Part shown: piece after piece, positions 45,564 to 63,949 of the stretch | How positions within the stretch are numbered: position 1 is the stretch's first letter | How the letters are laid out: each line of letters starts with the position of its first letter | From: Paramoeba atlantica | Lineage: Eukaryota > Protista > Discosea | Direction of reading: 5' to 3' | DNA length: 64,000 nucleotides | Assembly (NCBI GenBank): GCA_977017575.1 | Contig: CDRNVI010000034.1 | Location: 198,367-262,366, forward strand | Translations under genes and position numbers: made by a program | Notes under the pieces: model-generated | Seen by the model: only the letters and a program-made list of their open reading frames with translations | What the model was told of the DNA's origin: nothing | Database searches by the model: none

Positions 45564-45787
45564 AAAAAAAGGAGAAAAGGGAGAGGCGTGGAGAAGAGGG
45601 TGGGGTAGAGAAGAGACTTCGGGTAGGGGAAATAGAGTAGAGTGAACAAAAAAAGGCCTGCTGGTGTTCATAAACCCCCGTGCAATTTAGGGTATACTAT
45701 TTTGGTATACAGACTCATTAGTGTACAAATTGGTGCACACCCGAATTTGATCACCTTGAGATTAGAAAATTTACTGGACATTTGGTG

Positions 45788-47506
45788 TTACATCCGAATT
45801 CGTACGGATATTTTGTCTTCGCTCAATGTAAAGTGTTCGGGATGAGATTGTAGGAAGTGACAGACCCCACCTTTCATTCTGCGAAGGACCGTGCGTGCAT
45901 CACTCGGTAGTTGCACACCGATCTCAGAGACATTCATTGGAAGGAGGGGTTGACCTAAGAACAGTTTTCGAAGCTCTTGAAGCAGGACATCGTCATTGAA
46001 ATACGGATTTTCTACCGTAGCGCTCGGGCTCGCATTGTCGTCCTCGGTGGCTCGACGTACAAGATACTCTTTTTCAAAAGTACTTTTTTCTTGCACATAA
46101 CGCATGTTTTCCGTGACAACGACACGGTCGGGAAATTTCTGGAACCACTTTGCAAAACATACTGCATTAAGACCCTTCGTAACGTGGTGATACGCGGCTC
46201 TCTGTTCATCACTAATATTTTCCAATACGGCTTCCAGTAGACCTTTTAAAGGGACGCACATACCCTGTTCTGGTAGTTTCAGAAAAACCTTCTCCATTAA
46301 ATTTTGATTCCAATAATCGAATTCCTCGACGCTCATTGACACTTCCTTATCTCGTGCTTCCTCCAAATCTCTAAACTCTGTAAAATCAGGTGTAGCACAT
46401 GCTTGGTTAGCATATTCGCGGGCGATTTTATTTTCATTACTGTTAAACCTCTGTTGAAACTCCGTCTGGATAAGCGTCGTATAGGGTGCGAAGCTGCAAG
46501 GGGGACATATCTCGGGATGTTTTTCACGCATGCGACTTCGTATTCGGGGATGTTTCGAGTCTTCCATATTCATTTCAAACGCCTTAGGATATAGGAATGC
46601 AATGGTAGGTAAACGAAACGGTGCGGTATGTAGCCACGTCTTGCATGACGGAAATAAAAAAGTTTTACACGCGAAGGAAACAGGAACAAAGTGTGCTGGT
46701 AACCCACAAGCCAATAAAACAATAAATTCTCGAGACAACCCCAAGTGCTCGCCATCCGCAGGAGGAAGCTCTGTCGAGGAACAGCTTGGAATTCTTTTAA
46801 TGTATATGACTTGGTGAACCGGCATGAAGCCTATACGACAATCCTTGCAAAGAAAAACATATAATTTTCTTACAGGGGTTTTCTCCCATAATGCTTTCAT
46901 CTCCGGAGCTAACTTCTTGACCAATGTCTCAAGCTGCACAAAATGGTTCGGAGCAAGCAGAAGCAAAGCAGATGCCAGACGTTTAGTTAACATCACACAT
47001 TCCGTATCCCCAATATTAAACACATCCCCGGCGATAGCTTCAAAGTCTTTTCGCAGTAAGAAGGCCACCTTGGTGGGATTCCACTGCACCGTGTAATGCT
47101 CTGCAAGTGTATCATCACTTTGTATGGTTGTCAAGACTTCGCATGGAGGTCGGTTGTAGTAGAGATATGAAAAGCAATCAAGCCGCGCCCATCCCTGTTT
47201 TGGGACATATAGCTCAAGAAAACGCTTCAAATCACCTGGTGAGGGTAGAAAATTTCCGTTAGCGTCTACTCGACGTCGCACCTTTGTGCCGTCACGGCTC
47301 AGTTGAAACCCAGCGGGATATTCTTTCAAAAAATTTTGTATTGACCCAAACGAGACGTCCAGCACGCCTTGCACTCTCTTAGGCAACTTCATCTGTATGG
47401 TAGAGACGGTAGATACTGAGTGGTAGGGAACGTTTTTAGCAATGCTATAGGCAATCTCATGAGGCAAGGTAATAGGAGAATGAAACCGTCGCTGTGAACG
47501 CATCAT
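45788..47506 (-). CDS. Mitochondrial multi-winged-helix (LOTUS/OST-HTH-like) family protein, copy 1
   Basis: MMRSQRRF presequence; FGSIQNFLKEYPAGFQL; terminal LPSDARTVLRRMKGGVCHFLQSHPEHF; aligns with four neighbours. Confidence 0.8.
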   Translation of the reverse strand: MMRSQRRFHSPITLPHEIAYSIAKNVPYHSVSTVSTIQMKLPKRVQGVLDVSFGSIQNFLKEYPAGFQLSRDGTKVRRRVDANGNFLPSPGDLKRFLELYVPKQGWARLDCFSYLYYNRPPCEVLTTIQSDDTLAEHYTVQWNPTKVAFLLRKDFEAIAGDVFNIGDTECVMLTKRLASALLLLAPNHFVQLETLVKKLAPEMKALWEKTPVRKLYVFLCKDCRIGFMPVHQVIYIKRIPSCSSTELPPADGEHLGLSREFIVLLACGLPAHFVPVSFACKTFLFPSCKTWLHTAPFRLPTIAFLYPKAFEMNMEDSKHPRIRSRMREKHPEICPPCSFAPYTTLIQTEFQQRFNSNENKIAREYANQACATPDFTEFRDLEEARDKEVSMSVEEFDYWNQNLMEKVFLKLPEQGMCVPLKGLLEAVLENISDEQRAAYHHVTKGLNAVCFAKWFQKFPDRVVVTENMRYVQEKSTFEKEYLVRRATEDDNASPSATVENPYFNDDVLLQELRKLFLGQPLLPMNVSEIGVQLPSDARTVLRRMKGGVCHFLQSHPEHFTLSEDKISVRIRM

Positions 47507-47896
47507 TCTGTTCAACAGGACTCACATGTGAAAAGGGGTGCAACACTTATTCGAATATTTTAGAGAACTACAAGATTCCCTTTTCGAAGTAGAGTCCATA
47601 AACAACGCAAGTACATGTATGCCCGATGTTTAGCTATTTCTGTGAGGAAACGTCACGGTCCCAATTCGAGCACATGTCAAGGAAGAAGGAACGAAGAAAA
47701 CTTTTTTAAGATTTCATAGGGTGGACCACTACACTAGAAGTACATACACTAGAAGGGGAGGACTGGGAGGGTAAACACACTACATTCCATAAGGTATGTG
47801 TTATGATCAGCATAGCTACAGTATGACATAGCTATGAACGTCATAGTTATGTTTTTCTAGAATCGTATTGTTGAAAAAGCTTTCCTGTTACCTAAA

Positions 47897-49624
47897 CTAC
47901 TGTACTTGATGGGATTCTTTTTTTAGATAAACTAGATGTGATTCACTATCATAAATAAAGTGATCTGATTGCGACTGAATAAATTTCAAAACACCCCCGG
48001 CAGATCTCCGAAGTGCTGTCTGCGTTGCACGAGGCAAAGTGTTATGTATGTTGTATATGGAAATCGGTATTTTAGGACTAACAAGGAATAATTTACGAAT
48101 CTCATTGAGTGAAGCATCTTCAGTGTAGTAAATATTCTGCTTCTGAGACGTGTCATGTACCGCATCATCATCAGTGGCACGCCGCACAAGATAATCTTTC
48201 TCGTACCTTCGGTACTTGTCACAATATTGTATGCGTTCCTCCATAAAGAATTTACGAGGATTCTTTCGCAAAAGGCAAAAGAAGGATTCTCCATGTATAA
48301 CTCCGGCTCGAAAGCGAAAATTCGGAGATCTTTCGACAGCTGAATTGAGGAACATGTGATACAAATCCCACGATGCAATGCTCTCCCCACTGTCCGGAAG
48401 TAACTCCCATATTATGTTGATCGCTTCTGCGCGATCAGCTGTATCTGCTTTTTGTGTGTCAGGCTTCCATTTCGTTATATCTTTAAATACTTTCAAACAC
48501 GTGTCGGAGCAAACGGTTTCAGCAAAAGATTTTGCCTGACAGTTTTCCGGAAGGTTCAGTCGCCGAAAAAATTCCTCTTCGACACCTTCCCCATAGGGTG
48601 ATTCATCACTGGGAGGACAAATTTCAGGGTGAGTTGTTCTCAAAAGACTTCGAACAAGATATGACGTTCCGAACAAACCAGTGCAGCATTTTTTGTCGAA
48701 GGCGCGTGGGAACAAAGAAACAATAGTAGAGAGACGAAATTCGCAGGATTTCAGCCACGCTTTTACAGACGGAAATATATATTTATCTGCAACCTGTACA
48801 GCCACGAAGTTGTCTGGAAGGCTGCAGGCCAAAGACAACACCATTTTTAAAGGAACGAAATATTCACTGTATTGCTCTGTGCAGCATGGAATATCCCTAA
48901 CCTCGGGACGACGACGTACAAAGACTTCGCCGGTAGGTAGAAAAGTGGATATTTGAAATTTATCAAGGAAAGGATAGAAAAACCTGGGAGGATCTGCTTT
49001 AATTGTTCGCTGTACTTCAGCAGGGAGCCTCTTCTTCACCGCATAAAGGCTAACGAAATAATCTGGAATAAGTGACTCCATGATGTTGGAAGCAAATTTA
49101 GACATTAAAACCAAATTACTCGAGCCTATGGGATAAACTCCCTGGGCACGTTCCGTAAAACTACGTCGTGCTAAGAATGATGTTTTTAACACATCCCATT
49201 CGACCACGTATGCCTCGGATAAGGCATCGCTGCTTTGTATTCCAGATACCACGTAGCTGGGTTTTTGGTCATGGTATATTGAACAAAACTTGTCAAGACG
49301 GATCCATCCGTCTTCTGGAACGTACTGCTCCAAAAATTTCTCCAGGTCACCTGGTTGAGGAGTGCGACTGCCGTCTCCATCTAAACGAAGCCGAATATGA
49401 CACTCATCTCGACTAAGTTGAAAAGCGGCGGGGTGTTTTTTCACGTAAGAAGCTAAACTATTACCATATTCTTCGCTAAGTAGAGTTTTGATTTCGTTCT
49501 TCATTTTTGCATGTAGTCCCTGCACTGAGTCCTTTTTTGACCGGCGTAGAAAATACACTAAGACACATGCAATTTCACAAGACATTAAACGCTCCGGGGC
49601 TAATCTCACTAAAGACCTCCACAT
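47897..49624 (-). CDS. Mitochondrial multi-winged-helix family protein, copy 2
   Basis: MWRSLVRL; YGNSLASYVKKHPAAFQL; LACSLPDNFV..FPSVKAWL; LPRATQTALRRSAGGVLKFIQSQSDHF. Confidence 0.8.
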   Translation of the reverse strand: MWRSLVRLAPERLMSCEIACVLVYFLRRSKKDSVQGLHAKMKNEIKTLLSEEYGNSLASYVKKHPAAFQLSRDECHIRLRLDGDGSRTPQPGDLEKFLEQYVPEDGWIRLDKFCSIYHDQKPSYVVSGIQSSDALSEAYVVEWDVLKTSFLARRSFTERAQGVYPIGSSNLVLMSKFASNIMESLIPDYFVSLYAVKKRLPAEVQRTIKADPPRFFYPFLDKFQISTFLPTGEVFVRRRPEVRDIPCCTEQYSEYFVPLKMVLSLACSLPDNFVAVQVADKYIFPSVKAWLKSCEFRLSTIVSLFPRAFDKKCCTGLFGTSYLVRSLLRTTHPEICPPSDESPYGEGVEEEFFRRLNLPENCQAKSFAETVCSDTCLKVFKDITKWKPDTQKADTADRAEAINIIWELLPDSGESIASWDLYHMFLNSAVERSPNFRFRAGVIHGESFFCLLRKNPRKFFMEERIQYCDKYRRYEKDYLVRRATDDDAVHDTSQKQNIYYTEDASLNEIRKLFLVSPKIPISIYNIHNTLPRATQTALRRSAGGVLKFIQSQSDHFIYDSESHLVYLKKESHQVQ

Positions 49625-50078: not shown

Positions 50079-51806
50079 TTACGATTCCTTTAGATAAATT
50101 AGTGCCGAATCGCTTCCATGTGGTTCCATTCGAAACACTTTCGGATGGTTCGCGATGAACTTACGCCATCCGCCCATAAAGCGAAGGGCTCTCCGCGCCT
50201 GACTCGGTAACATAAATAGAATGCCTGTAGGAGATTTTCCATTGCGGTCATTTTTGAGAAATGTTTCTCGAATGGCCTGAATGAGGGCCTCTGACGTGAG
50301 GTATGGGTTCTGTTGCCCTTGGCGATGCGATGTCTCTGCAGGACTCTGCTGCGCCGCCTTACTAACTATCCAGTCGTATGCACGACCCATTTGCACCTCC
50401 TCTACATGGAGTCGCTCTGGAAAACGTTTAACAAACTTCAGTAGTGAATTTCTATGTTTCAGTGTGATAGTGTTCTTGATCTTACGATATCGATCAGCGG
50501 GAACGAAGTCACGAAGACGAATCATTAAATCATACAATCGTATAGGATCATGGGACTCATTAAGAACAAGATCTAGAGCATCCAATATTTCACTTGGTTC
50601 TAGTACGGGAGCATCTTTGCTAATCACAACGTCGTCTTTCCTTACCAAACGAAATATTTTCCTTTGAAATAACTTGTCAGAAGGTTCGGAAACAAGTTCA
50701 TTAAGCTCTTTAATTGTCTCCGGGCTCTGTTTCATCAGTTTTGCCTCAAACTCAGCTTCCGCTTCTAAAGTAAATGCCTGTTCGGTAGATGGCGCTAAAT
50801 GTGGATACTTCATTCGCAGCGCTGAGCTGACTTTACCATACGGTTCTATATTAATCGCCTTGGGATACATTTGGGCGAGATCGGAAAGAGAAAATGCTGC
50901 ACATTTTGCACCCCATTTCATTACGGAAGGAAATACAGCGCCCTGGGCGTAGAGAACCGAGACCGGCGTGGTAGGGAGTGAGAACGCGAGCTTTAGCATG
51001 AGCTTTGGGTGTAAGTCGTAGGCCTCATAGATGGGCCACTTGTTTTCTTCTTCTTCAACCGAGCGCGTGGCGCCCCACTTCCGTACGTACGGGGGATCAT
51101 TACGAAGGCAAGCCATTTCTAGCACTTCATCACAAAACCCTAGAGCCTGAGATACATTTACGGAATTGTGCCACCTGTGCTCATCTAAATTGGCATCCAT
51201 TTTCCCTTGTCGAAGTAGCATAGGAAACGGAACCCAAAAATTGGGCGCAAAGCTCTTGATGATTTTAAGAAGTGTCGGTGCCTTAATGCAAGTTGAGTTA
51301 TCACCCAGCGAAACTCTCCCCCCAGTCGATTCCCAAAACTTCTTGCGTATAATGTATTCCTTCTCGCTATTGGAGCATGCTTTTTGAAGATCAAAAATTT
51401 CAGCACAAGATGGGTCGTTTGATAGGTGTGAAATCACGTAAGACTTTCGCAATTTAGGGTGTAGTAATCTGCAAAAATCTTCAATTAGTAGGAATCCGAA
51501 TTTCGGCACAAATCTTTTCAATGCTTCACTTAACTGGGAGGACGAAGGAATGTGTTCGCGCACCTTCAAACGAACTATGGTTTCATCCCGATTCAAAAGA
51601 AACAATTCGGGGTAACGTTTAACAAATTTTATCATATCATACTGCTCAGCCGCAGCAACTTTAACAGGAACAGCAGCTTTACTTGTGATATTCGCTATAA
51701 ATCGCTGGTTTTTCTCTGCGACTTTTAGCGTTTTTTGGAGCCACACTAATAAGTCAGTCGGATGGACAAGAGTGTCCATCCGAAAGCGCGACGAAATACG
51801 GAACAT
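50079..51806 (-). CDS. Mitochondrial multi-winged-helix family protein, copy 3
   Basis: MFRISSRFR; FVKRYPELFLL; LAFSLPTTPV..FPSVMKWG; LPSQARRALRFMGGWRKFIANHPKVF. Confidence 0.8.
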   Translation of the reverse strand: MFRISSRFRMDTLVHPTDLLVWLQKTLKVAEKNQRFIANITSKAAVPVKVAAAEQYDMIKFVKRYPELFLLNRDETIVRLKVREHIPSSSQLSEALKRFVPKFGFLLIEDFCRLLHPKLRKSYVISHLSNDPSCAEIFDLQKACSNSEKEYIIRKKFWESTGGRVSLGDNSTCIKAPTLLKIIKSFAPNFWVPFPMLLRQGKMDANLDEHRWHNSVNVSQALGFCDEVLEMACLRNDPPYVRKWGATRSVEEEENKWPIYEAYDLHPKLMLKLAFSLPTTPVSVLYAQGAVFPSVMKWGAKCAAFSLSDLAQMYPKAINIEPYGKVSSALRMKYPHLAPSTEQAFTLEAEAEFEAKLMKQSPETIKELNELVSEPSDKLFQRKIFRLVRKDDVVISKDAPVLEPSEILDALDLVLNESHDPIRLYDLMIRLRDFVPADRYRKIKNTITLKHRNSLLKFVKRFPERLHVEEVQMGRAYDWIVSKAAQQSPAETSHRQGQQNPYLTSEALIQAIRETFLKNDRNGKSPTGILFMLPSQARRALRFMGGWRKFIANHPKVFRMEPHGSDSALIYLKES

Positions 51807-52695
51807 GTTAACTAGACATCGCGCAAATACCTATAATAAACTTCCGAGTAGTAAGGTGGAAAAACCTTTTCACATGACTATTAACAATTTAGCATGATAA
51901 CTATTAATAATTTTACCGCTATGGTTGCAGGTACTCGCAAAAGGGGTTTGTTTCGAAAAGAGGACAAATAAGTAGGGGGGCGGAGCTATGACAGTTAAGT
52001 GGGGGGAGTCACAGTTCGTGCATACTTAAAAAATACTGTTTACGAATCTTTATAGGTCAGCTTTAGTACCATCAGTAAAATAGTGTGTACTTTGTTGCTT
52101 GTCAAAATAGACGTATCATATGAAAATGTCCCTAAGGTATGCGGGCGCGAACGTGACCACCGCAACAGCACCGGGAACGCAAGCGGCCACGCGCCTATTG
52201 TAGAAGAAGAAAATGTTGCATCAATTTTTGATTTATCTTCTGCGACATAGCAACATGAAGCTGACGATGCCCTGTGGAGTCCGCGACGTACAATTACGCG
52301 TACAACCAAAAACCTGAAGAAATGGCATTGCCGGTAAAAAGGGAATATTTTTGTACCAACTCTTCCGATTGACAGAAAACAATTTTTGTAATATTCGAAT
52401 AAATTCCAATAATTTATAAGAATCTTTCATTACAAAGGAACTGTTATGCAAAGAAAGTTAGCACCACCTTTAAAATCATTTTTCGTGCAACAACATGAGC
52501 CTTGACTGCGAAGGGTATGAAACATTTCAGTGAATAAAATCCTACCATTGGCGTACAGGATGACCATTCCTTCCTAGGATGTGTAAAAACTCTTCAGCGC
52601 CGTGCGAAGGTGAAAGGAAAATAAATATCAAAATACTTAAGACTGTGCAAGAAAATTTAAAGAAATCTTCTTCGGTTTGCCTAAAAAAGAACCCA

Positions 52696-53275
52696 TAGTC
52701 CGCGTCATATTGATCCCCCCCTCAGGAAATTTTAGTTTTTTTATCCGATTTTGCTCATCTTTGCAGTATTCGAGAGATCTCGTTCCGGTAGGAAAGTTTT
52801 TTGCCGCAATAAAACGTAAGGAGGGGGGTGCCTCCAGGAGAGAATCCCAAAGTTAGGAAAAAACAGAAAAAGTTAGGAAAGAATTTCAATGATCACATGA
52901 CTCTGATACATTCAATTCAATCATAATCATGTGTGATCGCCGCTTAGCTACAAAGCGTTTTTTTGAGGAATTCGTATTTTTCATTTAACTAAAGGTATTT
53001 TTAAGGGATTCAGACGAGGATACGTGGGGTTTCGGCCTCTTCGGGGTGCTGGAAGAAGAAAAAGTCATGAAAAAATAAGAAAGTTTTACATCTATTCAAG
53101 ATTTTAGTAAAAAAACGTGTAATTTTCCACTATTTCGAAGCGTCTGGCTAAAAGGTAAAAACAGTGGCGAAGTACTTTTCTATGGGAACGAGATCTCTCG
53201 AATGCTGCATAGATGAGCAAAATCGGATAAAAAAGCTAAAATTTCCTGAGGGGGGGATCAATATGACGCAGACTG
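52696..53275. mobile_element. Tc1/mariner-type MITE with ~90-bp TIRs
   Basis: (T)AGTCCGCGTCATATTGATCCCCCCCTCAGG...GAGAGATCTCGTTCC and inverted copy ending ATATGACGCAGACTG|TA. Confidence 0.85.
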
Positions 53276-53749
53276 TATAAAGGGGGGAGGGGTCGAGGCT
53301 ATTATAAACAGGGGGGGTACAGTACTTGTATGTACTTACGGGACATACGGGTATGTTCCGGTGACGGGAACGTTTTTAGTAATTACAGCGCAGGCATGTC
53401 TCCACATCCACAATGGTAGATGCTGCGTCTTCTGGTGCTTGACACACGAGACAACGCCTAGGAGCCAACACCGAAAAAACGCTTTCTTTTCACATTCCGT
53501 AGAGTAAAGCTGCGGAAGAGAATCTTGCCCAGACATAGCTCTACAGGAGGAAATCATGATACGGAGTTTGATTGGAAAATTATTTTCTATTCTTTTGTAT
53601 TCAGAAATCTCAAAAGAGTACTAATTTCAAAAATATAGATTAAAGAAAGATTTTTTTTGAAAATAATTTACCCAGTGCAACCTGTGTTACCCAGTGTTAC
53701 CCATAGAAACTTCTAAAAAGGCGGACTTGCAGAAGGTCCATTGATAATA

Positions 53750-54480
53750 CAGGGGTGTAAATTTGGATGTGGGGGGGCCTAAAATTTGTAAAACTTGGCC
53801 AATTTTGAAAAATAATAGCGTATTCGAGAGCTCTCGAATTGGGTTCATGAACGTGCAAGTACAGCATCTGCATTAATTAGATTTTCAAGTGCACATACAA
53901 AGATTTTTTTTTTGGGAGACAAAATCTTGCATTTTTCACAGTTTTTCTGATTTCTCCCCTGATTCATGCCCCAAAGACAGGGTCGTGGGCGATAACCCGA
54001 ACACAAAGACTACGAAAGGGCTTATTCTTCGCCTGCGCACGTAGAAGCAGGCTGTTGCATGGTTCTTGTTGCCGATTACGAAACAACATAATCTTTTTCT
54101 CGCTAAAAATGTATGTTCCATAGTGGGCAACTTCAAAAATGATTGAGCCCCTCGGAATCGTGCAGATTCGATCGAAGCAGCGTTTCAAGGCCCCTGAAAA
54201 TGCCAAGAAGAGCTTTCGAAAGCGATGCTGTATTGTGATTGAGATTAACCGACGATAATAGCCATTATTAATTTCTTTTTCGATATGTGCTATTGATTTA
54301 GAAAGTTGCAAATAGCGTTTGGGGGCTCTTTGTCTAGGGGGCAATACCCCCTTGTGCCTAGTTCGGCCTTGCTACATTCATGAGCCCTGTTCGAGAGCTC
54401 TCGAATGCGCCATTATTTTCCAAAATTGGCCAAGTTTTACAAATTTTAGACCCCCCCCCACATCCAAATTTACACCCCTG
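53750..54480. mobile_element. Deleted Tc1 element, ~100-bp TIRs, TA TSD
   Basis: TA|CAGGGGTGTAAATTTGGATGTG ... CACATCCAAATTTACACCCCTG|TA; internal transposase remnant homologous to 31600-31745. Confidence 0.92.
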
Positions 54481-55127
54481 TATATCTTCGGGAAACTCAT
54501 GTCGTGCGCTTCGCGTTGAAAACTACCACCGCGTTTAACGAAGAGCCTAAAAAAGAAATTACCTTTGCAGATTCGTGGAGATCTCGAGGAACATTACTTG
54601 GGGAAAATATTTGCTTTTCGTTCGAAAAGCTATATTCTGGAAAAGCTGTATTCTGAAGAAAATTAACTGCGAAAGTCAAATTTCTGAGAAAAAAGATGCT
54701 CACATTTTCTTGAAGAAAACTCTTAAGAACACTCGAAGATCATAAAAAAAGGATATTTTACAAAGTAGTACAACATATCAGATGATGTCGACATGGAATG
54801 TGTTTGCCGTCGTATCGAGTGCACAATTCTAATCTTTTTTTGAACGATGCATGCAATATAGCACCCTTCTGCCGACATTCGAAATCCGACTTTTGTGCAT
54901 GGGAAATCACTCGTAGGCATGAATGAAGGCCTACTGAACGTATTGGGTAGAGAATACGACTCCAACCACACCATTCTTTCGACACGAAAAGGCCCCTTGG
55001 GGTCCAAAAAATACTTTTCATCGTTTTCAGTCAAAAATGGGTCATTTTTGGAGGCATACCACGGCTCGAAGGGGTATCTTGCGAAAACTGCGGAGAAAGC
55101 TAGTATAGGTCCTAAACTATCAAAATA

Positions 55128-55480
55128 CTATGAACCCCCCCTTTATACTTCGCCCATTTTGAGCAGTAACGAAGTATAAAGGGGGGGCCTGGAGGTTTTC
55201 CCCGCTGTAAAAAGAAAACCGCGCCGCGAAGCGGCGCGGCTCATCCTGTTTTCCTGTCTTTCCTTTTATATCACCTTCCATTTCTAGAAAGGAAGACTTA
55301 GAACGTTTTTTCTAAAACATACGTTTTTTTAAAACGTTTTTCAAAACGTGTTTTTTCTAAAACAAATTGAAAAAATACGAAAATTAAAACACAATCGTCC
55401 CCCCTTCGGGGGGGGCACACAAAAAACGAAGTATAAAGGGGGGGGGCTGACCAGCGAAGTAGAAAGGGGGGGGGTCACAG
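55128..55480. mobile_element. Short copy of the CTGTG-terminus MITE family
   Basis: TA|CTATGAACCCCCCCTTTATACTTCG ... GGGGGTCACAG|TA; shares internal sequence with 18156-19152. Confidence 0.8.
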
Positions 55481-55697
55481 TACAATATATGTAGGCGAAA
55501 CCATTTTGGAGAATATTTTGCCATTGTGTTCGCCAAGTTGAATTTTTTTTTCGAAAAATCCGAAATTGGAGAGATCGCGAGCGGCCCCTGATAAATGGGG
55601 GGAAGGTAGTGGTTGTTTTGGGGGAAATGAGAGGCCGAACGCACGGAGGGGCCGGACGAGCCAATGAACTCATGCCTATTTTTGTGCTACAAAGGTG

Positions 55698-55950
55698 GTA
55701 TGCATTATCAATGTGCTATATGCATTATCAATGTGTTATATGCTTCAGATACCTGACTTATGTGACTTCCATAATTCTGCATAGCAAGTCCCAAGTCCTG
55801 ACCACAACCACCCAACCCACCAAAGGATCATCACATTACGTCGTGAATCACATTACGTGGATCATCACATTACGTAGGTGAAATATGGTTTTCCACCCAT
55901 GGATGAAAAACCTACACATTATCAATGTGCTATATGCATTATCAATGTGC
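55698..55950 (+). repeat. Cluster of short imperfect tandem repeats
   Basis: TATGCATTATCAATGTGCTA-type 20-bp units at ~55698-55742 and ~55915-55950; GGATCATCACATTACGT units at ~55826-55876. Confidence 0.75.
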
Positions 55951-56317
55951 CGCTTAGTATGAATATCAATGTGCCCTTACTGAAATTATTCTGATATATT
56001 ATTAAAAACCATGACATAAAAAAGAGTTTTTCAAAATCGTTTCACATATTGTGTTTTGAGAGTTTGGGACCTTTACTAGCATTCTACGCCGTTGTTTTCA
56101 CAAAATACCCCTTCTTGAAGCCGTGGCACGCCTCCCAAAGTGACCCCCCAAAATAGGTGTCCAGGCAAAACCTGGCAAAACCTGACAGGTTTCAACCCTC
56201 TTAATATGCCATGTTTGTGTATCATTTCGATACAGATTTTGACGTAGGATTGGGAGCGCGCGAGGATGTCATAATAGTCGCTTCGCTAAACGCGGTGGTT
56301 GTTTTCAACATACTATA

Positions 56318-56420
56318 CAGGGGGGCCACGAAAACTGACTAGCTTCGCATTTTAGCCTCGTGAGGCCGTTTGAGCTAATTTTTGTTGCAAACGAGAGATC
56401 TCGTTCAGAATATCGTGTCT
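56318..56420. mobile_element. Solo left TIR of a Tc1-type element
   Basis: TA|CAGGGGGGCCACGAAAAC ... GAGAGATCTCGTTC. Confidence 0.6.
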
Positions 56421-56831
56421 ACGCTATTTAGAACCCGTTTATAAATATTTATAAGTCTGATCTTTTACATTTCGAAAATACTGAAATTTAAGACGATTTA
56501 TTTTGCAAAAAGCACAAAAAATAGTAAAAAAGTTGTTTTTCTCTTCTTTTTTTTTCACTATGGGCAAGCGGCATAGATTAAACCGTCGCCAATTGTCTCC
56601 AGAGCAGTCTTCGTATTCCACACGCATTGTTTGCGCACACGAAAGACATCGTGGTACAAGTATTGAAGACACAATCGCGGTTCGGAGAAGTCAGCTCCGA
56701 CAGTTGCGCGTCTGATTATGATGAGTAATACCTAAATTCGGAACGTCTGTACATATTTCTTTTTCATCAATAGTCTGTACATACTCGTTTATGCTATACT
56801 CCTCCTCTCATTGATTTTTATAAATATAAAC

Positions 56832-57191
56832 CACTGTCCGGGTTAATATTCCTGGTAGGAATATTAAGAAGGTATAGGAATATTAAGAGGTATAGGAATA
56901 TTAAAAAATTAGCAGAAAAGGACCAAAACATTTTCGCGCCGCTTCGCGGCGCGGTCTTTGCTCTTGTGTTCGTTTTTGGTTCTTTAGGGACTGTGTGCGC
57001 GTTGGGCTTGCTATTTTGATGAAAAAATCATCCAAAAAAGGGGAATATTGAAGGATCATTTTGGTGGATCTCAAGCAAAGACATGGTAGGTGTCAGGGAG
57101 AGAGGGGGGTAGGAATATTAAGCACCATTGGGACACTTAATATTCCTGGAAGGAGTAATACGGGGGTATAGGAATATTAACCCGGACAGTG
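56832..57191. mobile_element. 360-bp MITE with CACTG termini and subterminal GGAATATTAA repeats
   Basis: CACTGTCCGGGTTAATATTCCT ... AGGAATATTAACCCGGACAGTG; TSD not evident. Confidence 0.8.
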
Positions 57192-58041
57192 ATATAAATT
57201 ATAACAAAAAAGAAAATATATATTATATTTATAATTATAAAAATCAATGAGAATGTTTTCCAAAGATACCGGAGACCCGCCAGTAAACGACCCCCGGTAA
57301 GAGAGATTGGCTCTGGAGGCTGGCTGGTTGGCGGGGCTGAGCGGGCGGGGGTTGTTGGACGGGTAAGGGTGGGTGAGCGGGGTGAGGGTTATTGGGAGGG
57401 CTGTGATGGCTGTGGTACGGAGTTGTCTGGACAGAAAATCAATGCGCGCATGAGTAAAAGAGGTCTTAAACAGAGTGGGAAACCGAGTTCAACTCGCTTT
57501 CGAAGACGTGTGTGCGAAACACAACGTGTGTGCGATAAATATGATATATCGATTACTTGTAGAAGGGGGAGGAGCATTTACAATCAAAACAACCCAGGCT
57601 AAAATGGAAGACGGAGATACTCGTCCTTGCGCCCCCTCCTTCATCTAAGGTCTTGAGCGTCACACACGTCCAGTTAAAATTTGGCCTTTGCAGGTGCATT
57701 ACCAGAACATGTTGAAGAAGTATCTAACGAAACCAAAGCGCATACAGGTACATCAGGGCCCAAACTCTCCAAATACGCTAGAGGAGTTAATTTGGGAATC
57801 TTTTATTTTCACCCACGAATTTTCAGGTTTTCATTTCGAAAACTCACCCGACACGAAATCAGGCCACAAATCGGTCACGACGAAATAACCTACCGAGGGA
57901 ATAGTGCCTCCCTCAATATTTTTAAGCATGTCGTGAATGCTTTGTGCGAACAGAATCAAATTTATAAATTTCACAATTCTTATTTTTTTTTTCGAAAATT
58001 CTGTCTTGCCATTTATAAAAATCAATGAGAGACAGAGTATA

Positions 58042-58765
58042 CCGTATACCCCCAGTAAGAGAATGGGATTTGGGTCGAAATGGCCAAATCTCTCTTACTG
58101 GGGGGGTATGCCTTTTTGGCCAGTTTCCTCTTTTCTCCCAACTTTTTTGACTATTGTTTTGTATTTTTTCTTCGGAAAACGTGTTAAAACGCTTCTTTGG
58201 GTTACCCCCGAGGCCCCCAACATGCAAACACCCATCCCCTACCTATTTGGCTCCCAAGCCAAATCTCTCTTACTGGGGGTCAGCCCAAAAAGGGCCAAAT
58301 CTCTCTTACTGGGGGGGTATGCCTTTTTGGCCAGTTTCCTCTTTTCTCCCAACTTTTTTGACTATTTTTTTGTATTTTTTCTTCGGAAAACGTGTTAAAA
58401 CGCTTCTTTGGGTTACCCCCGAGGCCCCCAACATGCAAACACCCATCCCCTACCTATTTGGCTCCCAAGCCAAATCTCTCTTACTGGGGGTCAGCCCAAA
58501 AAGGGCCAAATCTCTCTTACTGGGGGGGTATGCCTTTTTGGCCAGTTTCCTCTTTTCTCCCAACTTTTTTGACTATTTTTTTGTATTTTTTCTTCGGAAA
58601 ACGTGTTAAAACGCTTCTTTGGGTTACCCCCGAGGCCCCCAACATGCAAACACCCATCCCCTACCTATTTGGCTCCCAAGCCAAATCTCTCTTACTGGGG
58701 GTCAGCCCAAAAAGGGCCAAATCTCTCTTACTGGGAGGGGGGTACCTTACTGGGGGGGTATACGG
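58042..58765. mobile_element. Tc2/pogo-type MITE with its 211-bp internal segment in three tandem copies
   Basis: TA|CCGTATACCCCC ... GGGGGTATACGG|TA; 211-bp period (identical ORF starts at 58392 and 58603); single-unit relative at 17832-18150. Confidence 0.92.
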
Positions 58766-58799
58766 TAGTTTCCAAAGAAAATAATAAAAAAATAAAAAA

Positions 58800-59330
58800 A
58801 CCCTCTTCTACCTCTAGGGAGGGCACTCCGCCCATCATCAGAGCCACGATACTGGAAGGGATTGCGGCTGCAGTCAACGTCTCCAGCTCCCCTCATAAGG
58901 ATACCGAGCTGGTCCAATGTACCGGTTCCCAACAGGGGTCGACCCCAACCACCCAGGTCGCAAACACGGAGATCTAACCCCCTCCCCCGAAAATCTGGCG
59001 GAACTATTGGGGAGGGGCTCTCTCCGCAAGCTTTACGCGGTTCAATGCCCCGCGTGGAGAGAACATGTGGCTAGCGTTTGTCACGATTCCCTTGACAAAT
59101 CAGTCGAAGGAAAAGCGGCGATTGCATGGAATCTTCTACTTGCAGTCAATAGATTCCTCTCTTACCCTGATGATAAACTGTCACAACGACAGTTAGCACG
59201 CGAACTCCGTGTGCGTGCTCGTCTGGAAGGATCGGAAACCTCGGCTCCGACCCCCAACCCTGCGAATGGCTCCCCCGTGTGTGTTACAAAACGGGTGGAA
59301 GAATTATCTAGGGCGGGAAAAAAGAAAAAT
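58800..59330 (+). mobile_element. Non-LTR retrotransposon fragment (pre-RT region, CRE-like)
   Basis: AW.LLLAVNRFLSYP...RARLEG...VTKRVEELSRAG resembles the helical region preceding CRE-clade RTs. Confidence 0.45.
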
Positions 59331-59534
59331 AAAATAAAATTTACTTAATCTGTCCCACTACAAGAACTTACTTCAGCGTTAATTTTGTGCATATAAAGGG
59401 GGGTCCCACTACACAAACTTTTTTCAGCCTGCATTTTGTGCATATTAAAGGGGGGTAAGGGGGGTGCATATTAAGGGGCGGGGTCACAGTAAGAAATGGA
59501 ACATGCCGCCACTGTTGAAAGAAGGGTCATGAGC

Positions 59535-59798
59535 TCAAGGACTGGTATAAGATGCCTCCTCTCCATGATAAAAGGGCTCGCTACGATGGCCCCCGAGCAA
59601 AAAAACGACGTTACATGCATTGGTCATTGTTTTATGCGTGAACTGCAGTAGTTTTCCGAATAAAGTCATGAGCTCATTGTAGAAGATTGTAAGTTTATAA
59701 GCGATAAAGGTCGGTGGAAGAACAAAAAACTCAAACATAAATCGAAATGAAAGGGACGGCTTCTCGGTGTCTACCGTATGCGGACCAAAATATTCCAA
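59535..59798 (-). mobile_element. pogo/DDE_1 transposase fragment
   Basis: VVFLLGGHRS resembles LLLLDGHSSH with catalytic Asp lost. Confidence 0.35.
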
Positions 59799-60037
59799 AA
59801 AATATCTCTAACTATCCCAAAAAATATGGGCATGAATGAAAAAACGTAGAAACCCCAATGACTTCGTAGACGTGCTGCGTAGACCGACGCTGTTCACGAA
59901 AGGGGAGTACCTTTCGTTGACGAGATCGAACTGAAATTTTAGCATTTTAGAACCGGCGTTTTTTATGTGCATTTTGAGAGTTCTGCTGCAGCAATCCGTT
60001 TCTCTGTGGACTGTTATCCTCTACTCACTCACCTTTT

Positions 60038-61980
60038 TCACTCCATCCGTCGCCTCCCCCCTCGCTGGGATCCCTCTCGTTTCTGTGCGACCGCCTTGTT
60101 TTTTTTCTCTTCCTCCTCCCTCTCCTCTGGGGTCACCAGCCACACGACATTAGCAAACTTATCGAAGTGAAACGTCCCGGGGTGTTTTAAAATTACCTGC
60201 GTCAGCCCGCCGTATCTTCGAGCCGCTTTCTTTGCGGCCTCCGGGAGCTGTGCCTGCAGCGCGTTCATCGACTTGCGACGCTCCGTGTCGGCCGCCCAAC
60301 AATCCAGCATGGCTTTCAATAGATTATCCATTAACAAATATGGATTCCCCTTCTCGTGGTCACATACCTCGTCGCGACGTCGTACGCAGTTCTCATAGAT
60401 CACATTGCCATGTGCTGTCTCCTTTTTTTGCTGGAATATATGAAACTTGTCATGGTGTTTACGAAGGAATGTCATTGGACGCCCATCATGGCGTAGATCT
60501 AAACCGTTGCGCAGCATCATGTGCTGCCTGGTATTGAGATGAGAGCTCACCAGGGGAAGCAGATCTGGCATAAGCACCGAAGAAAACTCCGGGATACGAT
60601 GGTAAATAATGTCCGCAATCTCGGCGTCGGTCATGGAGGGGGCGTCAAGCGGCAGAGAAATCCAGCCGAGTTTGGAGGAGTACACCCGCTTGAACCCCTC
60701 TCGTTTGCGGCGCTCGAAATCGACCGGAGTGAACATCGAGGTGCAGGGCTCCTCGGCGAGATTCAGAAGCTCCCGACGTGCCTCGGCGTGAGTTTCGGAA
60801 GTCAATGCGACGTCAAATGTTGCCTCCGCCTCCAGGGTGTGCTCGGTCCCCTCCACCGGCGACATCTCCGGGTAATCCTCCCTCACCAACGACCGTATCT
60901 GCCGGGTCTCACTGCGTGCGATAAGTTTCGGAAACATACACGCCATTGCGGAAAGCGTAAAAGCACTCTGGGCCCCCCATTTTGCAATCGAGGGAAATAC
61001 CCCCGCCTGAGCCTGTTCGAGGGAAACAAACTTTGTGGGAAGACAAAACGCCAGCTTCACCATCACCTCCGGCGGCATCGCATAGCTCCTGTAGCTCCCC
61101 GCTAACCTCTCATCCTTATCCACATCCCACGCCACTTTCACATTCGGCAACCTCCGGACAAATATCTCCTTCTGTTTTCCATAATACGCCTGGTCCAGCT
61201 CCGGGGTCACCAACAGCACCGTCTCCGGCCCCACCCCCCTCTCCGTCACCGTCCGTCGCACATAGGACACCACCACCGCCCACGGCACCCAGTACCCCGG
61301 GGTGATTTGCAAAACCCGCTTCCCCACATCCACCGCGGTGCCATACATCACCGTCCCGCTCCCCGGCGGGAACCGGCTCTTGGTCTCCGCCACCCAGGCG
61401 CGCCTCCCCACGTACGGCGCCCCCTCGCTGTGGTCCTTGCGCACCTCGTAGCGCGTGGCCATCTCCCCCCCCCGGGTCAGCACCTGGAGCAGCCGCGGCA
61501 CCTCCTGGGAGAGCATAATGTGCAGCAGCTCGAGCCGGATGTAACCCGCGTGGGGCACCAGGCGGTGGATCCCGTTCGCGAGGTCGGCGTCCTGCTGCAC
61601 CACGGACGGGGGGACGCGACGGAGCTGGAGCGCGGTGCCCTCCCGGTTGAGCTGGAAGTAGGTGGGGAAGGCGTGGGCGAAGGTGCGGGGGGTGCCAAAG
61701 TACTTCTCCAGTTTCACCCCGTCCCGGTAGGACAGCGCGGGGAGCAGCGCGGAGAGGGGGAGACGGCCGGGGGGAAGTTCCCGATGCGGTGCGCGCAGAG
61801 CAGACAGCGCGCGACGGTGAACACGAGGTCGAGCCCGGCGGAGCGACGGACCTCGGGGTACTGCGAGGCGACGTAGGAGGTGGTGAGGAGGTGGTCGAGG
61901 GAGGGGGGAGGGGGCGGAGGGGGGGCGCAGCGAAGGGTGGGGGTGCGGTAGTGGAGGAGGGGGAAAAGGTTGCGGTACAT
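60038..61980 (-). CDS. Mitochondrial multi-winged-helix family protein, copy 4 (one-base frameshift in a 6-G run at 61769-61774)
   Basis: MYRNLFPLLHYR presequence in frame of ORF 61714-62052 joins GRLPLSALL...FGTPRTFAHAFPTYFQL frame of ORF 60038-61717; LPEAAKKAARRYGGLTQVILKHPGTF. Confidence 0.75.
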
Positions 61981-62163
61981 GGGGGGAAGGAAGACGTGAG
62001 ATTGGAAGAGGTTAGGATTGGGGGAAATAAAAAAAGAGTTGAGTAGAAACAAGGATGTGGTTGGGAAGGTGTAGCGAGACGAATGGGAAATACCGGTGAG
62101 GTCAGTATGTTGGATTTTCTTTACAAGGGATGTTAGAGGTGTGTCGTGGCAGTGACCTGGTGC

Positions 62164-63949
62164 TTATCTGCTACCTGTGGAAGTGTTATTTTGTTGAATT
62201 GTGCTACATAATAGAACCACTACTTGTCCGCACACTCGGATATTCTTTGGATATGCCATGAAAAACTTTTGAATTCCCTTGGTTCGCAAAGATTTTTTTG
62301 CGCCATCCGGTAGACGCTCAAACAGATTACTGATGGCCATTGATTTTCGTCCAGTATCAAAGCAAGAAATTATAGCTTCAAGGAGAATTTGCGGGTCCAA
62401 AAAAATATTTCCCCGTTCCTCGGGAGAAGCTGGTTGTCGAGACAGAATATATTGGAGTCGTTTATCCTCCTTGGGTTGCTGCTCCATGCTAAAACCGCAG
62501 TTAGGATATTTGCGTATAAGCTTGACAATGCTTCCCTGGTGTCGACTTAGCAAAGCATGTTTTACTTTATCCTGAACGACACTACTGATATTACGTATAT
62601 CTGCCGTTACCTTGACCAGTGGCACGCACTCCATCTCAGGGACTCTTTCGCGTATCATTTCCAGTATCTCATGATCGGTAAACGGATTTTGCACTCTGTC
62701 TAAGAGCTTTTTCTTCCATCCGACTCGAACTTTTACCTTTTCCGTACATTTGTATGGCTGGAAAAACTTACTTGAGGGCTCGGAAGCCATGTGCAGCAAA
62801 TGTTCCAGCTCGGGGCTTGCAGCAATCTTGGTGCAAAACTCAGATTCCGCCTCAGCGGTATATTCTAGACCTGTTTCTGGGGATATATCGGGGTATTGCT
62901 TTCGTACTATGGAGCGTACGTCTTTTTCCCAATTGACTTCTATAATTTCTGGATACATTTTAACAAGGGCGGAAAAGGAAAACGCAAGATCGTTCTCGAT
63001 CCACCTTTTGACAGAAGGAAACACATTCCATTGTGCCTCCCTCTGAGAGCGAAATTCACAAGGCAACGAAAAAGCTAACTTCAAAACTTTCTTGGGACCG
63101 AGTCGGAACGATGTATGCGACACCTCACACGGAGGAAGTTCAAACTCACAATTTCGATTGTCGCGCCGAACAAAAATATCACTACTATTCGCGTAGCTGG
63201 AGAGCTGAATGGCCTGATTTAAAATTGCTGAAACTCGACTATGTCCAGCTACATCTATGGCATTACGATGTTCCGGTGGTACACGCTCTAGACACTCTTG
63301 TAAGGGTACCCAATAATGCGGTACGGCGCGAATCAACATGTCCGCCGCTTCTGCTGCCAAAAAATAAACTATGGTTATCACCAACTAAGAAAACACTAAG
63401 CAGGCAAGCTTCTGTTTCACGTTTTAATATGAATCGTTTCTTATTTGAATCAATAGCCGTTGTATATATTTTTTGTAGATCCTCGTTGTTTAAGAACAAT
63501 TGGTAAACCGTCGCAGAAGATATATTGCCAAACAGATGACACAGTAACTCAAGATGAACGAAACCTATTGGAGGCATTATAGACTCCAGCACCTTTTGCA
63601 ATGCCTTCTCGTTGATGTCTTTTTCAGGAATCGGAGGGACTCGCTCAATGAGGTCTCGATCGGGAAAAATGCGGAAAACACTTGGGTAGTTAGAAAAAAG
63701 GTTATTAATAGATCCCCAATACTCCACTATCTTAGATCTCTTTTGCTCCTTCCATCTTGCTCTCACATTCGACAGTGAACCCCTCCAAGGCCGTGCGTTG
63801 TAGCCCGTTCGATTATTTACGCGGTCACAAAGCGTCAGACACGTCCAACTAAGCGTCTCAAACGCAAGTATGTTGCGCGCCAAAATTTTCATGCTGGCGC
63901 GACATGATAAATCTTTCTGTTGGACTCTGATGCGCGAGAATAGAAACAT
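62164..63949 (-). CDS. Mitochondrial multi-winged-helix family protein, copy 5 (one-base frameshift in a 6-A run at 63359-63364)
   Basis: MFLFSRIR; WGSINNLFSNYPSVF (ORF 63263-63949) continues as LAAEAADMLIRAVPHYWVP..LAFSLP..FPSVKRWI..LPDGAKKSLRTKGIQKFFMAYPKNI (ORF 62164-63384). Confidence 0.75.

What the first reader, a model, noticed from the sequence alone, without database searches (positions are those of the whole stretch)
45788..63949. Array of five deeply diverged mitochondrion-targeted proteins made of repeated winged-helix (LOTUS/OST-HTH-like) modules
Seen: five co-oriented genes of ~570-650 aa, each starting with an Arg-rich, acid-poor presequence (MMRSQRRF, MWRSLVRL, MFRISSRFR, MYRNLFPLLHYR, MFLFSRIR). 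They are colinear over their whole length despite low identity. Shared blocks: G.+..F+..YP..F.L at the N-terminus; L...+P..G+..L+; +P.+WV; a conserved core LA..LP..FV......+FPS+..W.......LS.+..+YP..+......+RS.+R..YP++.P......T.E.E.EF; and a terminal NPY...LP..A+..LR..GG+..F+..HP..F. The F+..[HY]P..F motif recurs several times per protein, implying tandem domains. Established: LOTUS/OST-HTH and PORR-type domains with this motif bind RNA or helicases, and kinetoplastid mitochondria need many RNA-binding factors for U-indel editing and mRNA processing. Inference: an old, possibly lineage-specific expansion of kinetoplast RNA/DNA-binding proteins, perhaps with one paralog per transcript or processing step. 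The array reaches the window edge and may continue.
Basis: partly seen in the sequence, partly recalled or inferred. Interest (0 to 1): 0.8.

Follow-up and report, generated by a model that had tools for sequence, protein, structure and literature searches.

The report
Tandem six-winged-helix mitochondrial protein genes
Five neighbouring genes in a Perkinsela-related kinetoplastid encode old, diverged copies of an undescribed protein built from six predicted winged-helix modules (one LOTUS-like) behind a mitochondrial-type leader. They are probably nucleic-acid binders of the kinetoplast-bearing mitochondrion, and the family has so far been found only in this early-branching group.

Summary
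Five colinear paralogs (21-33% identity) lie on the minus strand at 45788-63949. Corrections: g4 and g5 each carry a 1-nt homopolymer frameshift in this contig, but are intact on the 99.8%-identical allelic contig and in contigs of two public runs. An 8.2-kb spacer of retroelement debris splits the array. The window end is the contig end.

An AlphaFold2 model (pLDDT 80.6) shows six winged-helix modules. Module 5 superposes best on solved LOTUS domains (TDRD7 Z 10.4, TDRD5, Tejas, Egalitarian, Oskar, MARF1). The other modules are generic winged helices. Pfam OST-HTH and PORR do not match, and WH_Egal matches only below threshold.

An exhaustive HMMER search of 1.84 billion proteins found named relatives only in Perkinsela, Apiculatamorpha and Papus (Prokinetoplastina), apart from one weak hit to a Branchiostoma WH_Egal protein. 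No trypanosomatid was among the 30 of 46 hits whose source I looked up. No chain of a solved structure matched significantly.

The array is syntenic in two other Perkinsela-like genomes. One paralog has clear orthologs; others arose in separate lineages. Mitochondrial targeting is predicted only, from the N-termini and from three Perkinsela homologs listed in a published predicted mitoproteome. Function is inferred: mitochondrial RNA (or kDNA) binding.

The scan noted this same stretch before (s1-370301). This is a new, uncharacterised family of a known fold, of moderate interest.

The parts
45788..47506 (-). g1, 572 aa, starts MMRSQRRF. Intact here; the allele on C69 has a 5-bp insertion at window position 46156.
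47897..49624 (-). g2, 575 aa, starts MWRSLVRL. Sister of g1 (lineage-specific duplication).
50079..51806 (-). g3, 575 aa, starts MFRISSRFR. This is the paralog that was modelled; it has six predicted winged-helix modules.
50349..50609 (-). g3 module 5 (residues 400-486), the LOTUS-like winged helix.
   Evidence: TDRD7 3rco Z 10.4, rmsd 2.3, 76/76 aligned; TDRD5 Z 10.1; Tejas Z 9.4; Oskar Z 8.0; MARF1 Z 7.8
50082..50309 (-). g3 module 6 (residues 500-575), C-terminal winged helix with the LP..AR..LR..GG...F...HP..F motif. Homologous to module 1.
50817..51305 (-). g3 modules 3 and 4 (residues 168-330), the most conserved core of the family (P.YWVP, FVRR, LKLAFSLP, FPS..W, MYP).
51807..60037 (.). 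8.2-kb spacer without long ORFs. It holds a 211-bp tandem repeat (3.1 copies, 58078-58740) and a retroelement ORF fragment (58971-59318, + strand).
60038..61980 (-). g4, starts MYRNLFPLLHYR. Frameshifted at about 61768 in this contig (G6 against G7); 647 aa when intact (L006:1420-3363:-). Ortholog of P0006 and of the 620-aa gene of L020.
62164..63949 (-). g5, starts MFLFSRIR. Frameshifted at 63359 in this contig (A6 against A5); 594 aa when intact (L009:1477-3261:-).
44415..45242 (-). eIF-1A-like gene directly downstream of the array. It is a synteny anchor shared with the Perkinsela-like contig L019.

Best explanation
The five genes are members of an undescribed, fast-evolving protein family of early-branching kinetoplastids (Prokinetoplastina). 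Each protein has a short basic N-terminal leader of the kinetoplastid mitochondrial type. Behind it come six winged-helix modules and a conserved helical linker between modules 4 and 5. Modules 1, 5 and 6 are detectably related to one another and to the LOTUS / Egalitarian group of winged helices; modules 2-4 are divergent generic winged helices.

The most likely function is that they are imported into the mitochondrion and act as non-catalytic nucleic-acid-binding adaptors, more likely for RNA than for kDNA. Binding would use conserved basic residues in and next to the modules. Different paralogs would have different targets or partners in mitochondrial RNA processing, editing, stability or translation.

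Shown: the paralogy, the predicted fold, the taxonomic range, the synteny, and the mix of old and young duplications. Inferred: import, nucleic-acid binding, and specialisation of paralogs.
For: Paralogy and colinearity.

Fold:
- The AF2 model has pLDDT 80.6 and shows six winged-helix (helix/strand) units.
- Foldseek returns only tandem-winged-helix proteins: TFIIIC tauB E 5.6e-4, Egalitarian, UFL1, RPC82, TDRD7 LOTUS, STK19, SelB.
- In the exhaustive VIA search, LOTUS domains are the top hits for module 5, at Z 10.4-7.8, above generic winged helices at Z about 7. Egalitarian aligns over modules 5-6 at Z 8.8.
- The core model (pLDDT 90.8) gives two further winged helices.

Sequence links:
- WH_Egal matches below threshold in 8 of 18 members.
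- The family profile hits a Branchiostoma protein that has three bona fide WH_Egal stretches.
- hhalign of module 6 against that protein gives 89% probability, E 2e-6.
- Language-model features are nearest to WH_Egal (0.88, 172 shared features), OST-HTH and WHD_TTC3.
- Internal repeats: M1~M6 at 96% probability, M5~M6 at 82%.

Targeting:
- N-termini follow M-[FWYLM]-R..., are basic and acid-poor, across four organisms. Most members have pI 8-9.4.
- KNH06186, KNH07776 and KNH05188 are in Table S1.7.1 (predicted Perkinsela mitoproteome) of PMC5601477, in mtTP category 4.

Retention:
- At least 8 paralogs are kept in the 9.5-Mb (my recollection of PMC5601477, not checked here) Perkinsela genome.
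- The array is syntenic in three genomes whose AlaRS proteins are only 47% identical.
- Conserved basic positions lie in and next to the modules: R154/K155, R242/K243, K272, R327/R331, K457, K483, R538/R542.

Precedents:
- Plant mitochondrial MNU1/2 proteins carry LOTUS domains (PMC9181182).
- Egalitarian has been solved bound to RNA stem-loops (PDB titles).
Against: - No experiment or proteome shows localisation or binding.
- The Pfam OST-HTH and PORR profiles do not match, and WH_Egal stays under its cut-off.
- Winged helices serve equally often as DNA binders or as protein-protein scaffolds. Many of the best whole-model matches (TFIIIC, RPC82, UFL1, ESCRT-II, cullin WHB, MAGE) are of that kind.
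- Module 5 also shows weak forkhead-like sequence similarity (E 0.014).
- The legend of the 'mtTP' column was not retrieved. The description columns beside two of the Perkinsela entries look copied from neighbouring rows.
- Two of the five genes are frameshifted in this haplotype, and the other allele of g1 is truncated, so not every copy need be functional.
Confidence: 0.45

Rival explanations
1. They are kDNA-binding proteins. The winged helices would contact double-stranded DNA and serve in packaging, replication or segregation of the very large mitochondrial DNA mass of prokinetoplastids.
For: Winged helices are classic DNA binders. Module 6 and module 5 align with forkhead, histone H5, MarR and Fur domains at Z 6.5-7.3. 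Module 5 has a weak forkhead-like 'RH..SL' recognition-helix match (FOXK E 0.014-0.02). Most members have basic pI. Conserved basic pairs sit at the module ends.
Against: The best structural matches of module 5 are LOTUS domains, which are known for RNA or helicase binding, and they score about 3 Z units above the DNA-binding winged helices. The forkhead sequence match is not significant. No homolog was found among known kDNA proteins in solved structures.
Confidence: 0.2
2. They are protein-protein scaffolds. Examples would be assembly factors or lineage-specific subunits of the mitoribosome or of another mitochondrial complex, with the winged helices used as interaction modules and not as nucleic-acid binders.
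For: The whole-model and core matches are multi-winged-helix scaffolds: TFIIIC tauB, RPC82/62, UFL1, ESCRT-II, cullin WHB, MAGE/Nse3, ScpB. The most conserved residues are structural prolines and aromatics plus an acidic helix (E350, F353) that could be a docking motif. A Trypanosoma brucei mitoribosomal LSU assembly-intermediate chain appears at Z 6.6 (6yxy_Bi).
Against: That Z value is at the level of generic winged helices. No sequence-profile match to any chain of a solved trypanosomatid mitochondrial complex. Many divergent paralogs fit substrate diversification better than a fixed subunit does.
Confidence: 0.2
3. They are not mitochondrial at all. They would be cytosolic or nuclear LOTUS/Egalitarian-like RNA-binding or helicase-regulating proteins whose N-termini only resemble presequences.
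For: All characterised LOTUS and Egalitarian proteins of animals are cytoplasmic. Targeting here rests on prediction only. Some members have acidic residues early (P0007 and P0009), possibly because their start codons are mis-called.
Against: The M-[FWYLM]-R, basic, acid-poor N-terminus recurs across paralogs and across four organisms. Three Perkinsela homologs got the top targeting category in PMC5601477.
Confidence: 0.1
4. Part of the array is decaying: g4 and g5 in this haplotype, and g1 in the other, are pseudogenes.
For: Frameshifts lie at 61768 and 63359 here, and a 5-bp insertion lies in the C69 allele of g1. Six of 7 allelic SNPs in g1 are non-synonymous.
Against: The two window frameshifts are 1-nt homopolymer length differences, a typical assembly error. 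Intact forms exist in the allele and in contigs of two runs. g4 has conserved orthologs.
Confidence: 0.25

Closest known systems
LOTUS / OST-HTH domains (TDRD5, TDRD7, Oskar, Tejas, MARF1; Pfam PF12872)
   Same: Module 5 of g3 superposes on solved LOTUS domains over the whole domain: 3rco Z 10.4, rmsd 2.3, 76/76; 3s93 Z 10.1; 8wxs Z 9.4; 5cd8 Z 8.0; 5yad Z 7.8. The hydrophobic 'F...hP..F' C-terminal motif is shared.
   Different: There is no Pfam OST-HTH match. Here six modules are packed into one approximately 575-aa protein with no Tudor, NYN or other partner domain. A mitochondrial-type leader is present. No germline or cytoplasmic granule context applies.
Egalitarian N-terminal winged-helix pair (Pfam WH_Egal PF23713; PDB 9rvy and related)
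   Same: This is the closest sequence family. Matches are below threshold in 8 of 18 members. There is a transitive link through a Branchiostoma WH_Egal protein. The feature score is 0.88. The two Egalitarian domains align to modules 5-6 at Z 8.8. Egalitarian has been solved bound to RNA stem-loops.
   Different: Scores stay under the Pfam cut-off (22.7 against 27 bits). The relative orientation of the two domains differs (rmsd 15). There is no exonuclease-like domain and no BicD/dynein context.
PORR domain proteins of plant organelles (Pfam PF11955)
   Same: The concept is the same: organelle-targeted, multi-copy, non-catalytic proteins proposed to bind organellar RNA.
   Different: The PORR profile finds nothing in these genes or in the whole genome above its cut-off. 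Homology is not supported.
Multi-winged-helix scaffolds (TFIIIC tauB, RPC82/RPC62, UFL1, ESCRT-II, STK19, SelB C-terminus)
   Same: The architecture of several consecutive winged helices is shared. These are the top Foldseek matches of the whole model and of the core.
   Different: TM-scores are at most 0.18 and identity is 7-11%. This is a resemblance of architecture only. None of these proteins is mitochondrial.
Plant mitochondrial MNU1/MNU2 (NYN nuclease plus two LOTUS domains)
   Same: They are a precedent for LOTUS-type modules working on mitochondrial transcripts (PMC9181182).
   Different: MNU proteins carry a NYN nuclease domain. The present family has no recognisable catalytic domain.

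Membership tests
LOTUS / OST-HTH (PF12872) | Significant match to the Pfam OST-HTH profile | tested here: not met
   There is no OST-HTH hit in any of the five genes or in the 18 aligned members. A whole-genome scan finds only two weak hits elsewhere.
LOTUS / OST-HTH (PF12872) | Winged-helix fold superposable on solved LOTUS domains, better than on other winged helices | tested here: met
   Met for module 5 only: Z 10.4, 10.1, 9.4, 8.0 and 7.8 for five LOTUS structures, against about 7 for generic winged helices. Modules 1, 2 and 6 gave only generic matches in the whole-model search, and the core model of modules 3-4 gave generic matches dominated by module 3. This rests on a predicted model.
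LOTUS / OST-HTH (PF12872) | Binding of G-rich/G4 RNA, or activation of a DEAD-box helicase (eLOTUS) | not testable with these tools
   This needs biochemistry. The properties are known from PMC7498356 and PMC5458760.
WH_Egal (PF23713) | Pfam profile match above the gathering score (27 bits) | tested here: not met
   The best score is 22.7 bits, E 1.4e-4 (g1 residues 534-568). Eight of 18 members match at E <= 0.1. hhalign to a bona fide WH_Egal protein gives 89% probability, E 2e-6. A distant relationship is likely, but membership is not established.
PORR (PF11955) | Pfam PORR profile match | tested here: not met
   There is no hit in the genes. The best hit in the whole genome is E 0.33, elsewhere.
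Forkhead winged helix | Significant sequence match to forkhead domains, including the recognition helix | tested here: inconclusive
   The profile of modules 5-6 hits FOXK2/ILF at E 0.014-0.02, with an aligned 'RH..SL' motif. This is not significant, and the structural best matches are LOTUS domains, not forkhead.
Characterised trypanosomatid mitochondrial complexes (RESC, mitoribosome, assembly factors with solved structures) | Sequence-profile or fold match to a chain of those structures | tested here: not met
   Profiles A1, A2 and A4 give no significant hit against all PDB chains. The only trypanosome chain in the fold lists is 6yxy_Bi at a generic Z of 6.6.
Kinetoplastid mitochondrial matrix proteins (N-terminal presequence) | Short, basic, acid-poor N-terminal leader of the M-[FLWY]-R type; experimental import | tested here: inconclusive
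   The sequence features are present in most members. Three Perkinsela homologs are in a published predicted mitoproteome, category 4. No dedicated predictor or experiment was available here.

The most novel reading that the evidence does not exclude
Prokinetoplastids have evolved their own class of organellar gene-expression factors: a multi-copy family of six-winged-helix, LOTUS-like proteins. It would play the role that PPR, OPR or PORR families play elsewhere. Each paralog would recognise a particular mitochondrial transcript, guide RNA class or G-rich pre-edited region, possibly recruiting or activating a mitochondrial DEAD-box helicase during U-insertion/deletion editing.
Probability: 0.2. 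Interest if true: 0.75.

Novelty: new variant of a known kind. Interest (0 to 1): 0.55.

Why it matters
Kinetoplastid mitochondria run one of the most elaborate RNA-processing systems known, and nearly all knowledge of it comes from trypanosomatids. This family is predicted to be mitochondrial and is kept in at least 8 copies even in the drastically reduced Perkinsela genome. It is held in a syntenic array across genomes whose housekeeping proteins are only about 50% identical. It has no Pfam model, and no trypanosomatid counterpart was detected. It is therefore a concrete candidate for lineage-specific mitochondrial nucleic-acid biology at the base of the kinetoplastids. It would also place the LOTUS/Egalitarian-type winged helix in a protist organelle. 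The GenBank names of the Perkinsela homologs ('FNR-like protein', 'fatty acid oxidation complex subunit alpha', 'TPR-containing') have no support in the Pfam scans run here, and 'multifunctional fatty acid oxidation complex subunit alpha' (KNH05382) was not scanned.

Tried and rejected
- The word-index homolog searches with g1, with the 741-aa paralog and with the 18-sequence alignment returned only self-hits. This is uninformative, because the index was saturated.
- Sequence-profile searches against PDB chains gave nothing significant.
- PORR and OST-HTH profiles gave no match.
- A fold search of the core against the ESM Atlas returned only generic winged-helix-containing bacterial clusters, with TM below 0.5. 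A first attempt failed on the server.
- Foldseek with the core model gave no hit at E <= 0.001.
- Pfam scans of the 3191-aa, 3579-aa, 741-aa and 658-aa distant relatives found no extra domains.
- The T. brucei IDs printed beside KNH06186 (MRPL13) and KNH07776 (MRB6070) in Table S1.7.1 of PMC5601477 were rejected as orthology evidence. They repeat the neighbouring rows, and the sequences are plainly members of this family.
- Contigs of public runs could not settle whether the window's frameshift alleles are real. One run's contigs break exactly at 61760/61769.
- Whether run X5 is RNA is only a guess, so its two small identical contigs over g5 and the g4 3' end are not counted as proof of transcription.
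Full report
**1. What is in the sequence**

All long ORFs of the region lie on the minus strand. Three are open and of equal size:
- g1, 45788-47506 (572 aa from the first ATG)
- g2, 47897-49624 (575 aa)
- g3, 50079-51806 (575 aa)

- g4 starts with MYRNLFPLLHYR at 61980 and continues in another frame from about 61768 to the stop at 60038.
- g5 starts with MFLFSRIR at 63949 and changes frame near 63359.

All-against-all BLASTP shows colinear, almost full-length matches between all five. Identity is 21-33%, and E-values run from 8e-100 (g1/g2) to 6e-09.

**2. State of the copies**

The window is G000:C34:198367-262366, and the contig ends where the window ends. A second contig, C69, carries the same array at 99.7-99.8% identity. 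It is most simply the other haplotype.

- On C69, g4 (647 aa) and g5 (594 aa) are open.
- The window differs by one G in a G6/G7 run at 61768 and by one A in an A6/A5 run at 63359.
- Contigs assembled independently from two public runs carry the intact forms. A third run's contigs break exactly at 61760/61769.
- Whether the window's frameshifts are true alleles or homopolymer errors therefore remains open.
- The C69 allele of g1 has a 5-bp insertion that truncates it. Six of the 7 allelic SNPs in g1 change the amino acid.

Between g3 and g4 lie 8.2 kb without long ORFs. This spacer contains a 211-bp tandem repeat. It also holds a fragment 65% identical to the N-terminus of a reverse-transcriptase-bearing ORF found upstream on C69. 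It is retroelement debris, not further family members.

**3. Fold**

Pfam gives only sub-threshold hits to the Egalitarian winged-helix family. These recur in 8 of 18 aligned family members.

An AlphaFold2 model of g3, built on an 18-sequence alignment, has mean pLDDT 80.6 and pTM 0.64. It shows six helix-strand-helix-helix-strand-strand units:

| Module | Residues |
|---|---|
| M1 | 12-82 |
| M2 | 86-156 |
| M3 | 168-245 |
| M4 | 256-330 |
| M5 | 400-486 |
| M6 | 500-575 |

A helical linker (331-399) joins M4 and M5.

- Foldseek against the PDB returns only multi-winged-helix proteins: TFIIIC tauB, Egalitarian, UFL1, RPC82, TDRD7 LOTUS 2-3, STK19, SelB.
- An exhaustive VIA-align search places five solved LOTUS domains at the top for M5. 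These are TDRD7 (Z 10.4, rmsd 2.3, 76 of 76 residues), TDRD5 (10.1), Tejas (9.4), Oskar (8.0) and MARF1 (7.8).
- Egalitarian aligns across M5-M6 at Z 8.8. Generic winged helices (MarR, Fur, forkhead, H5) come in around Z 7.
- A separate model of the conserved core, residues 165-375, has pLDDT 90.8. It is two more winged helices plus a helical hairpin, with only generic matches (best Z 6.2).
- Profile-profile comparison of the modules shows M1~M6 (96%, E 2e-9) and M5~M6 (82%). M2-M4 have diverged beyond detection.
- The family profile also reaches a Branchiostoma protein with three bona fide WH_Egal stretches. hhalign of M6 to it gives 89% probability, E 2e-6.
- Language-model features point the same way: WH_Egal 0.88, then OST-HTH and WHD_TTC3.
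- The Pfam OST-HTH and PORR profiles do not match.

The 'repeated winged-helix' reading is therefore well supported. 'LOTUS-like' holds at fold level for one module, and as a distant relationship to the Egalitarian/LOTUS group for M1, M5 and M6. PORR is not supported.

**4. Who has it**

An exhaustive HMMER search of 1.84 billion representative proteins gave 46 hits.

- I looked up 30 of them. Every hit that carries a taxon name is from Perkinsela sp. CCAP 1560/4, Apiculatamorpha spiralis or Papus ankaliazontas, all Prokinetoplastina.
- The one exception is the weak Branchiostoma WH_Egal hit.
- The rest are unnamed ENA or JGI contigs.
- No trypanosomatid, bodonid, diplonemid or euglenid protein was among those looked up, although such proteomes are in the source collections. 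This absence holds at the sensitivity of a five-sequence HMM, and ten of the 46 hits were not looked up and have no other known source (six more come from this genome's own assemblies).
- Perkinsela keeps at least eight full-length paralogs.

Within the present genome the profile also finds a 741-aa and a 662-aa relative. It also finds a roughly 3190-aa ORF with at least three copies of the N-terminal modules.

Earlier notes of this scan call the genome a Perkinsela relative. My own data agree. The best homologs and the synteny are with Perkinsela-like contigs, but the divergence is deep: AlaRS 47%, HisRS 54% identity.

**5. Synteny and history**

In two ENA contigs of Perkinsela-like genomes (L019, L020) the family members also sit in tandem.
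- Upstream lies an S4/RluA-type pseudouridine synthase.
- In L019, eIF-1A, an unnamed gene, AlaRS, HisRS and glutathionylspermidine synthase follow directly downstream, exactly as in the window.
- Copy number differs: two in L019, three in L020, and six here counting the 662-aa gene.

A maximum-likelihood tree gives these groupings:
- g4 with the L019 and L020 genes (support 100/99).
- The 662-aa gene with the 672-aa gene of L020 (100/99; both are long branches).
- g1 with g2, as a duplication private to this lineage (100/98).
- Eleven Perkinsela-side genes in a clade of their own (89/89).
- g3 and g5 are unresolved.

The array is therefore old, and it has kept duplicating independently. The family evolves faster than the neighbouring housekeeping genes: g4 orthologs are 33% identical.

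**6. Targeting and likely function**

Targeting evidence:
- Almost all members begin with M-[FWYLM]-R and a basic, acid-poor stretch, and most have pI 8-9.4.
- Two neighbouring genes of the window, a PIF1-like helicase and a glutaredoxin/GST-like protein, have similar basic, acid-poor starts; that they are mitochondrial is only my expectation from other kinetoplastids.
- Three Perkinsela homologs (KNH06186, KNH07776, KNH05188) are listed in the predicted mitoproteome of PMC5601477, with the highest 'mtTP' category. I could not retrieve the legend of that column. The T. brucei IDs printed next to two of them look copied from adjacent rows, so I do not use them.

Function evidence:
- No catalytic domain is detectable.
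- Conserved residues are mostly structural prolines and aromatics. There are also conserved basic positions in and next to the modules, and an acidic helix in the linker.
- Known properties of the nearest domains: LOTUS binds G-rich/G4 RNA (PMC7498356) and activates a DEAD-box helicase (PMC5458760). Egalitarian was solved on RNA stem-loops. Plant mitochondrial MNU1/2 carry LOTUS domains (PMC9181182).
- Prokinetoplastid mitochondria perform very extensive U-indel editing (PMC7859406).

The best-supported reading is a family of imported, non-catalytic nucleic-acid-binding adaptors, more probably for RNA. The rivals are kDNA binding, a pure protein scaffold, or non-mitochondrial LOTUS-like proteins. 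None of them is excluded.

**7. Verdict**

This is a real, undescribed protein family with a known fold in a new architecture and setting. The functional ones remain hypotheses. Interest is moderate: the finding gives specialists a defined, testable candidate for lineage-specific mitochondrial biology at the base of the kinetoplastids, but nothing yet shows what the proteins do.

Noticed in passing
window 61230-61980 (5' 750 nt of g4, minus strand): A 70% GC island lies inside g4. The coding-strand GC skew flips from -0.42 (C-rich, giving a poly-proline N-terminus) to +0.44 (G-rich). It matches the 'mirror-skewed GC islands' that other agents noted across this genome.
   Followed up: partly
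window 51807-60037: An 8.2-kb ORF-poor spacer lies inside the array. It has a 211-bp tandem repeat (3.1 copies, 99% identical, 58078-58740). It also has a fragment (58971-59318, + strand) 65% identical to the N-terminus of a 751-aa reverse-transcriptase ORF on C69. The same spacer is present in the allelic contig.
   Followed up: partly
G000:C65:~378000-383000 and C7:~45000-50000 (P0017, 3191 aa): A giant ORF of about 3190 aa contains at least three repeats of the family's N-terminal modules and has no Pfam domain. Perkinsela has a 3579-aa counterpart, KNH04395.
   Followed up: partly
window 46156 and g1 generally; L017: The C69 allele of g1 carries a 5-bp insertion that truncates it; the 499-aa ENA gene call P0001 (its contig ctg3972l was not matched to C69) looks like this truncated form. 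Six of 7 allelic SNPs in g1 are non-synonymous, which suggests relaxed constraint on one g1 allele.
   Followed up: partly
L019 and L020 versus window 28199-45242: The gene order eIF-1A, unnamed gene, AlaRS, HisRS, glutathionylspermidine synthase is conserved in L019 despite only 37-60% protein identity. An S4/RluA pseudouridine synthase flanks the array upstream in all three genomes.
   Followed up: partly
GenBank KNH07776, KNH05382/KNH05719, KNH05188 (Perkinsela sp. CCAP 1560/4): Homologs of this family are named 'FNR-like protein FLP', 'multifunctional fatty acid oxidation complex subunit alpha' and 'Tetratricopeptide repeat-containing protein'. For KNH07776 (P0012) and KNH05188 (P0030) nothing in the Pfam scans supports these names; the KNH05382 cluster was not scanned.
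   Followed up: no
PMC5601477 Table S1.7.1, row 20 (KNH09345): Another predicted mitochondrial Perkinsela protein ends with a single 'GGLLKFV..RPRYFRI' stretch that resembles module 6. This type of winged helix may occur singly in other mitochondrial proteins.
   Followed up: no
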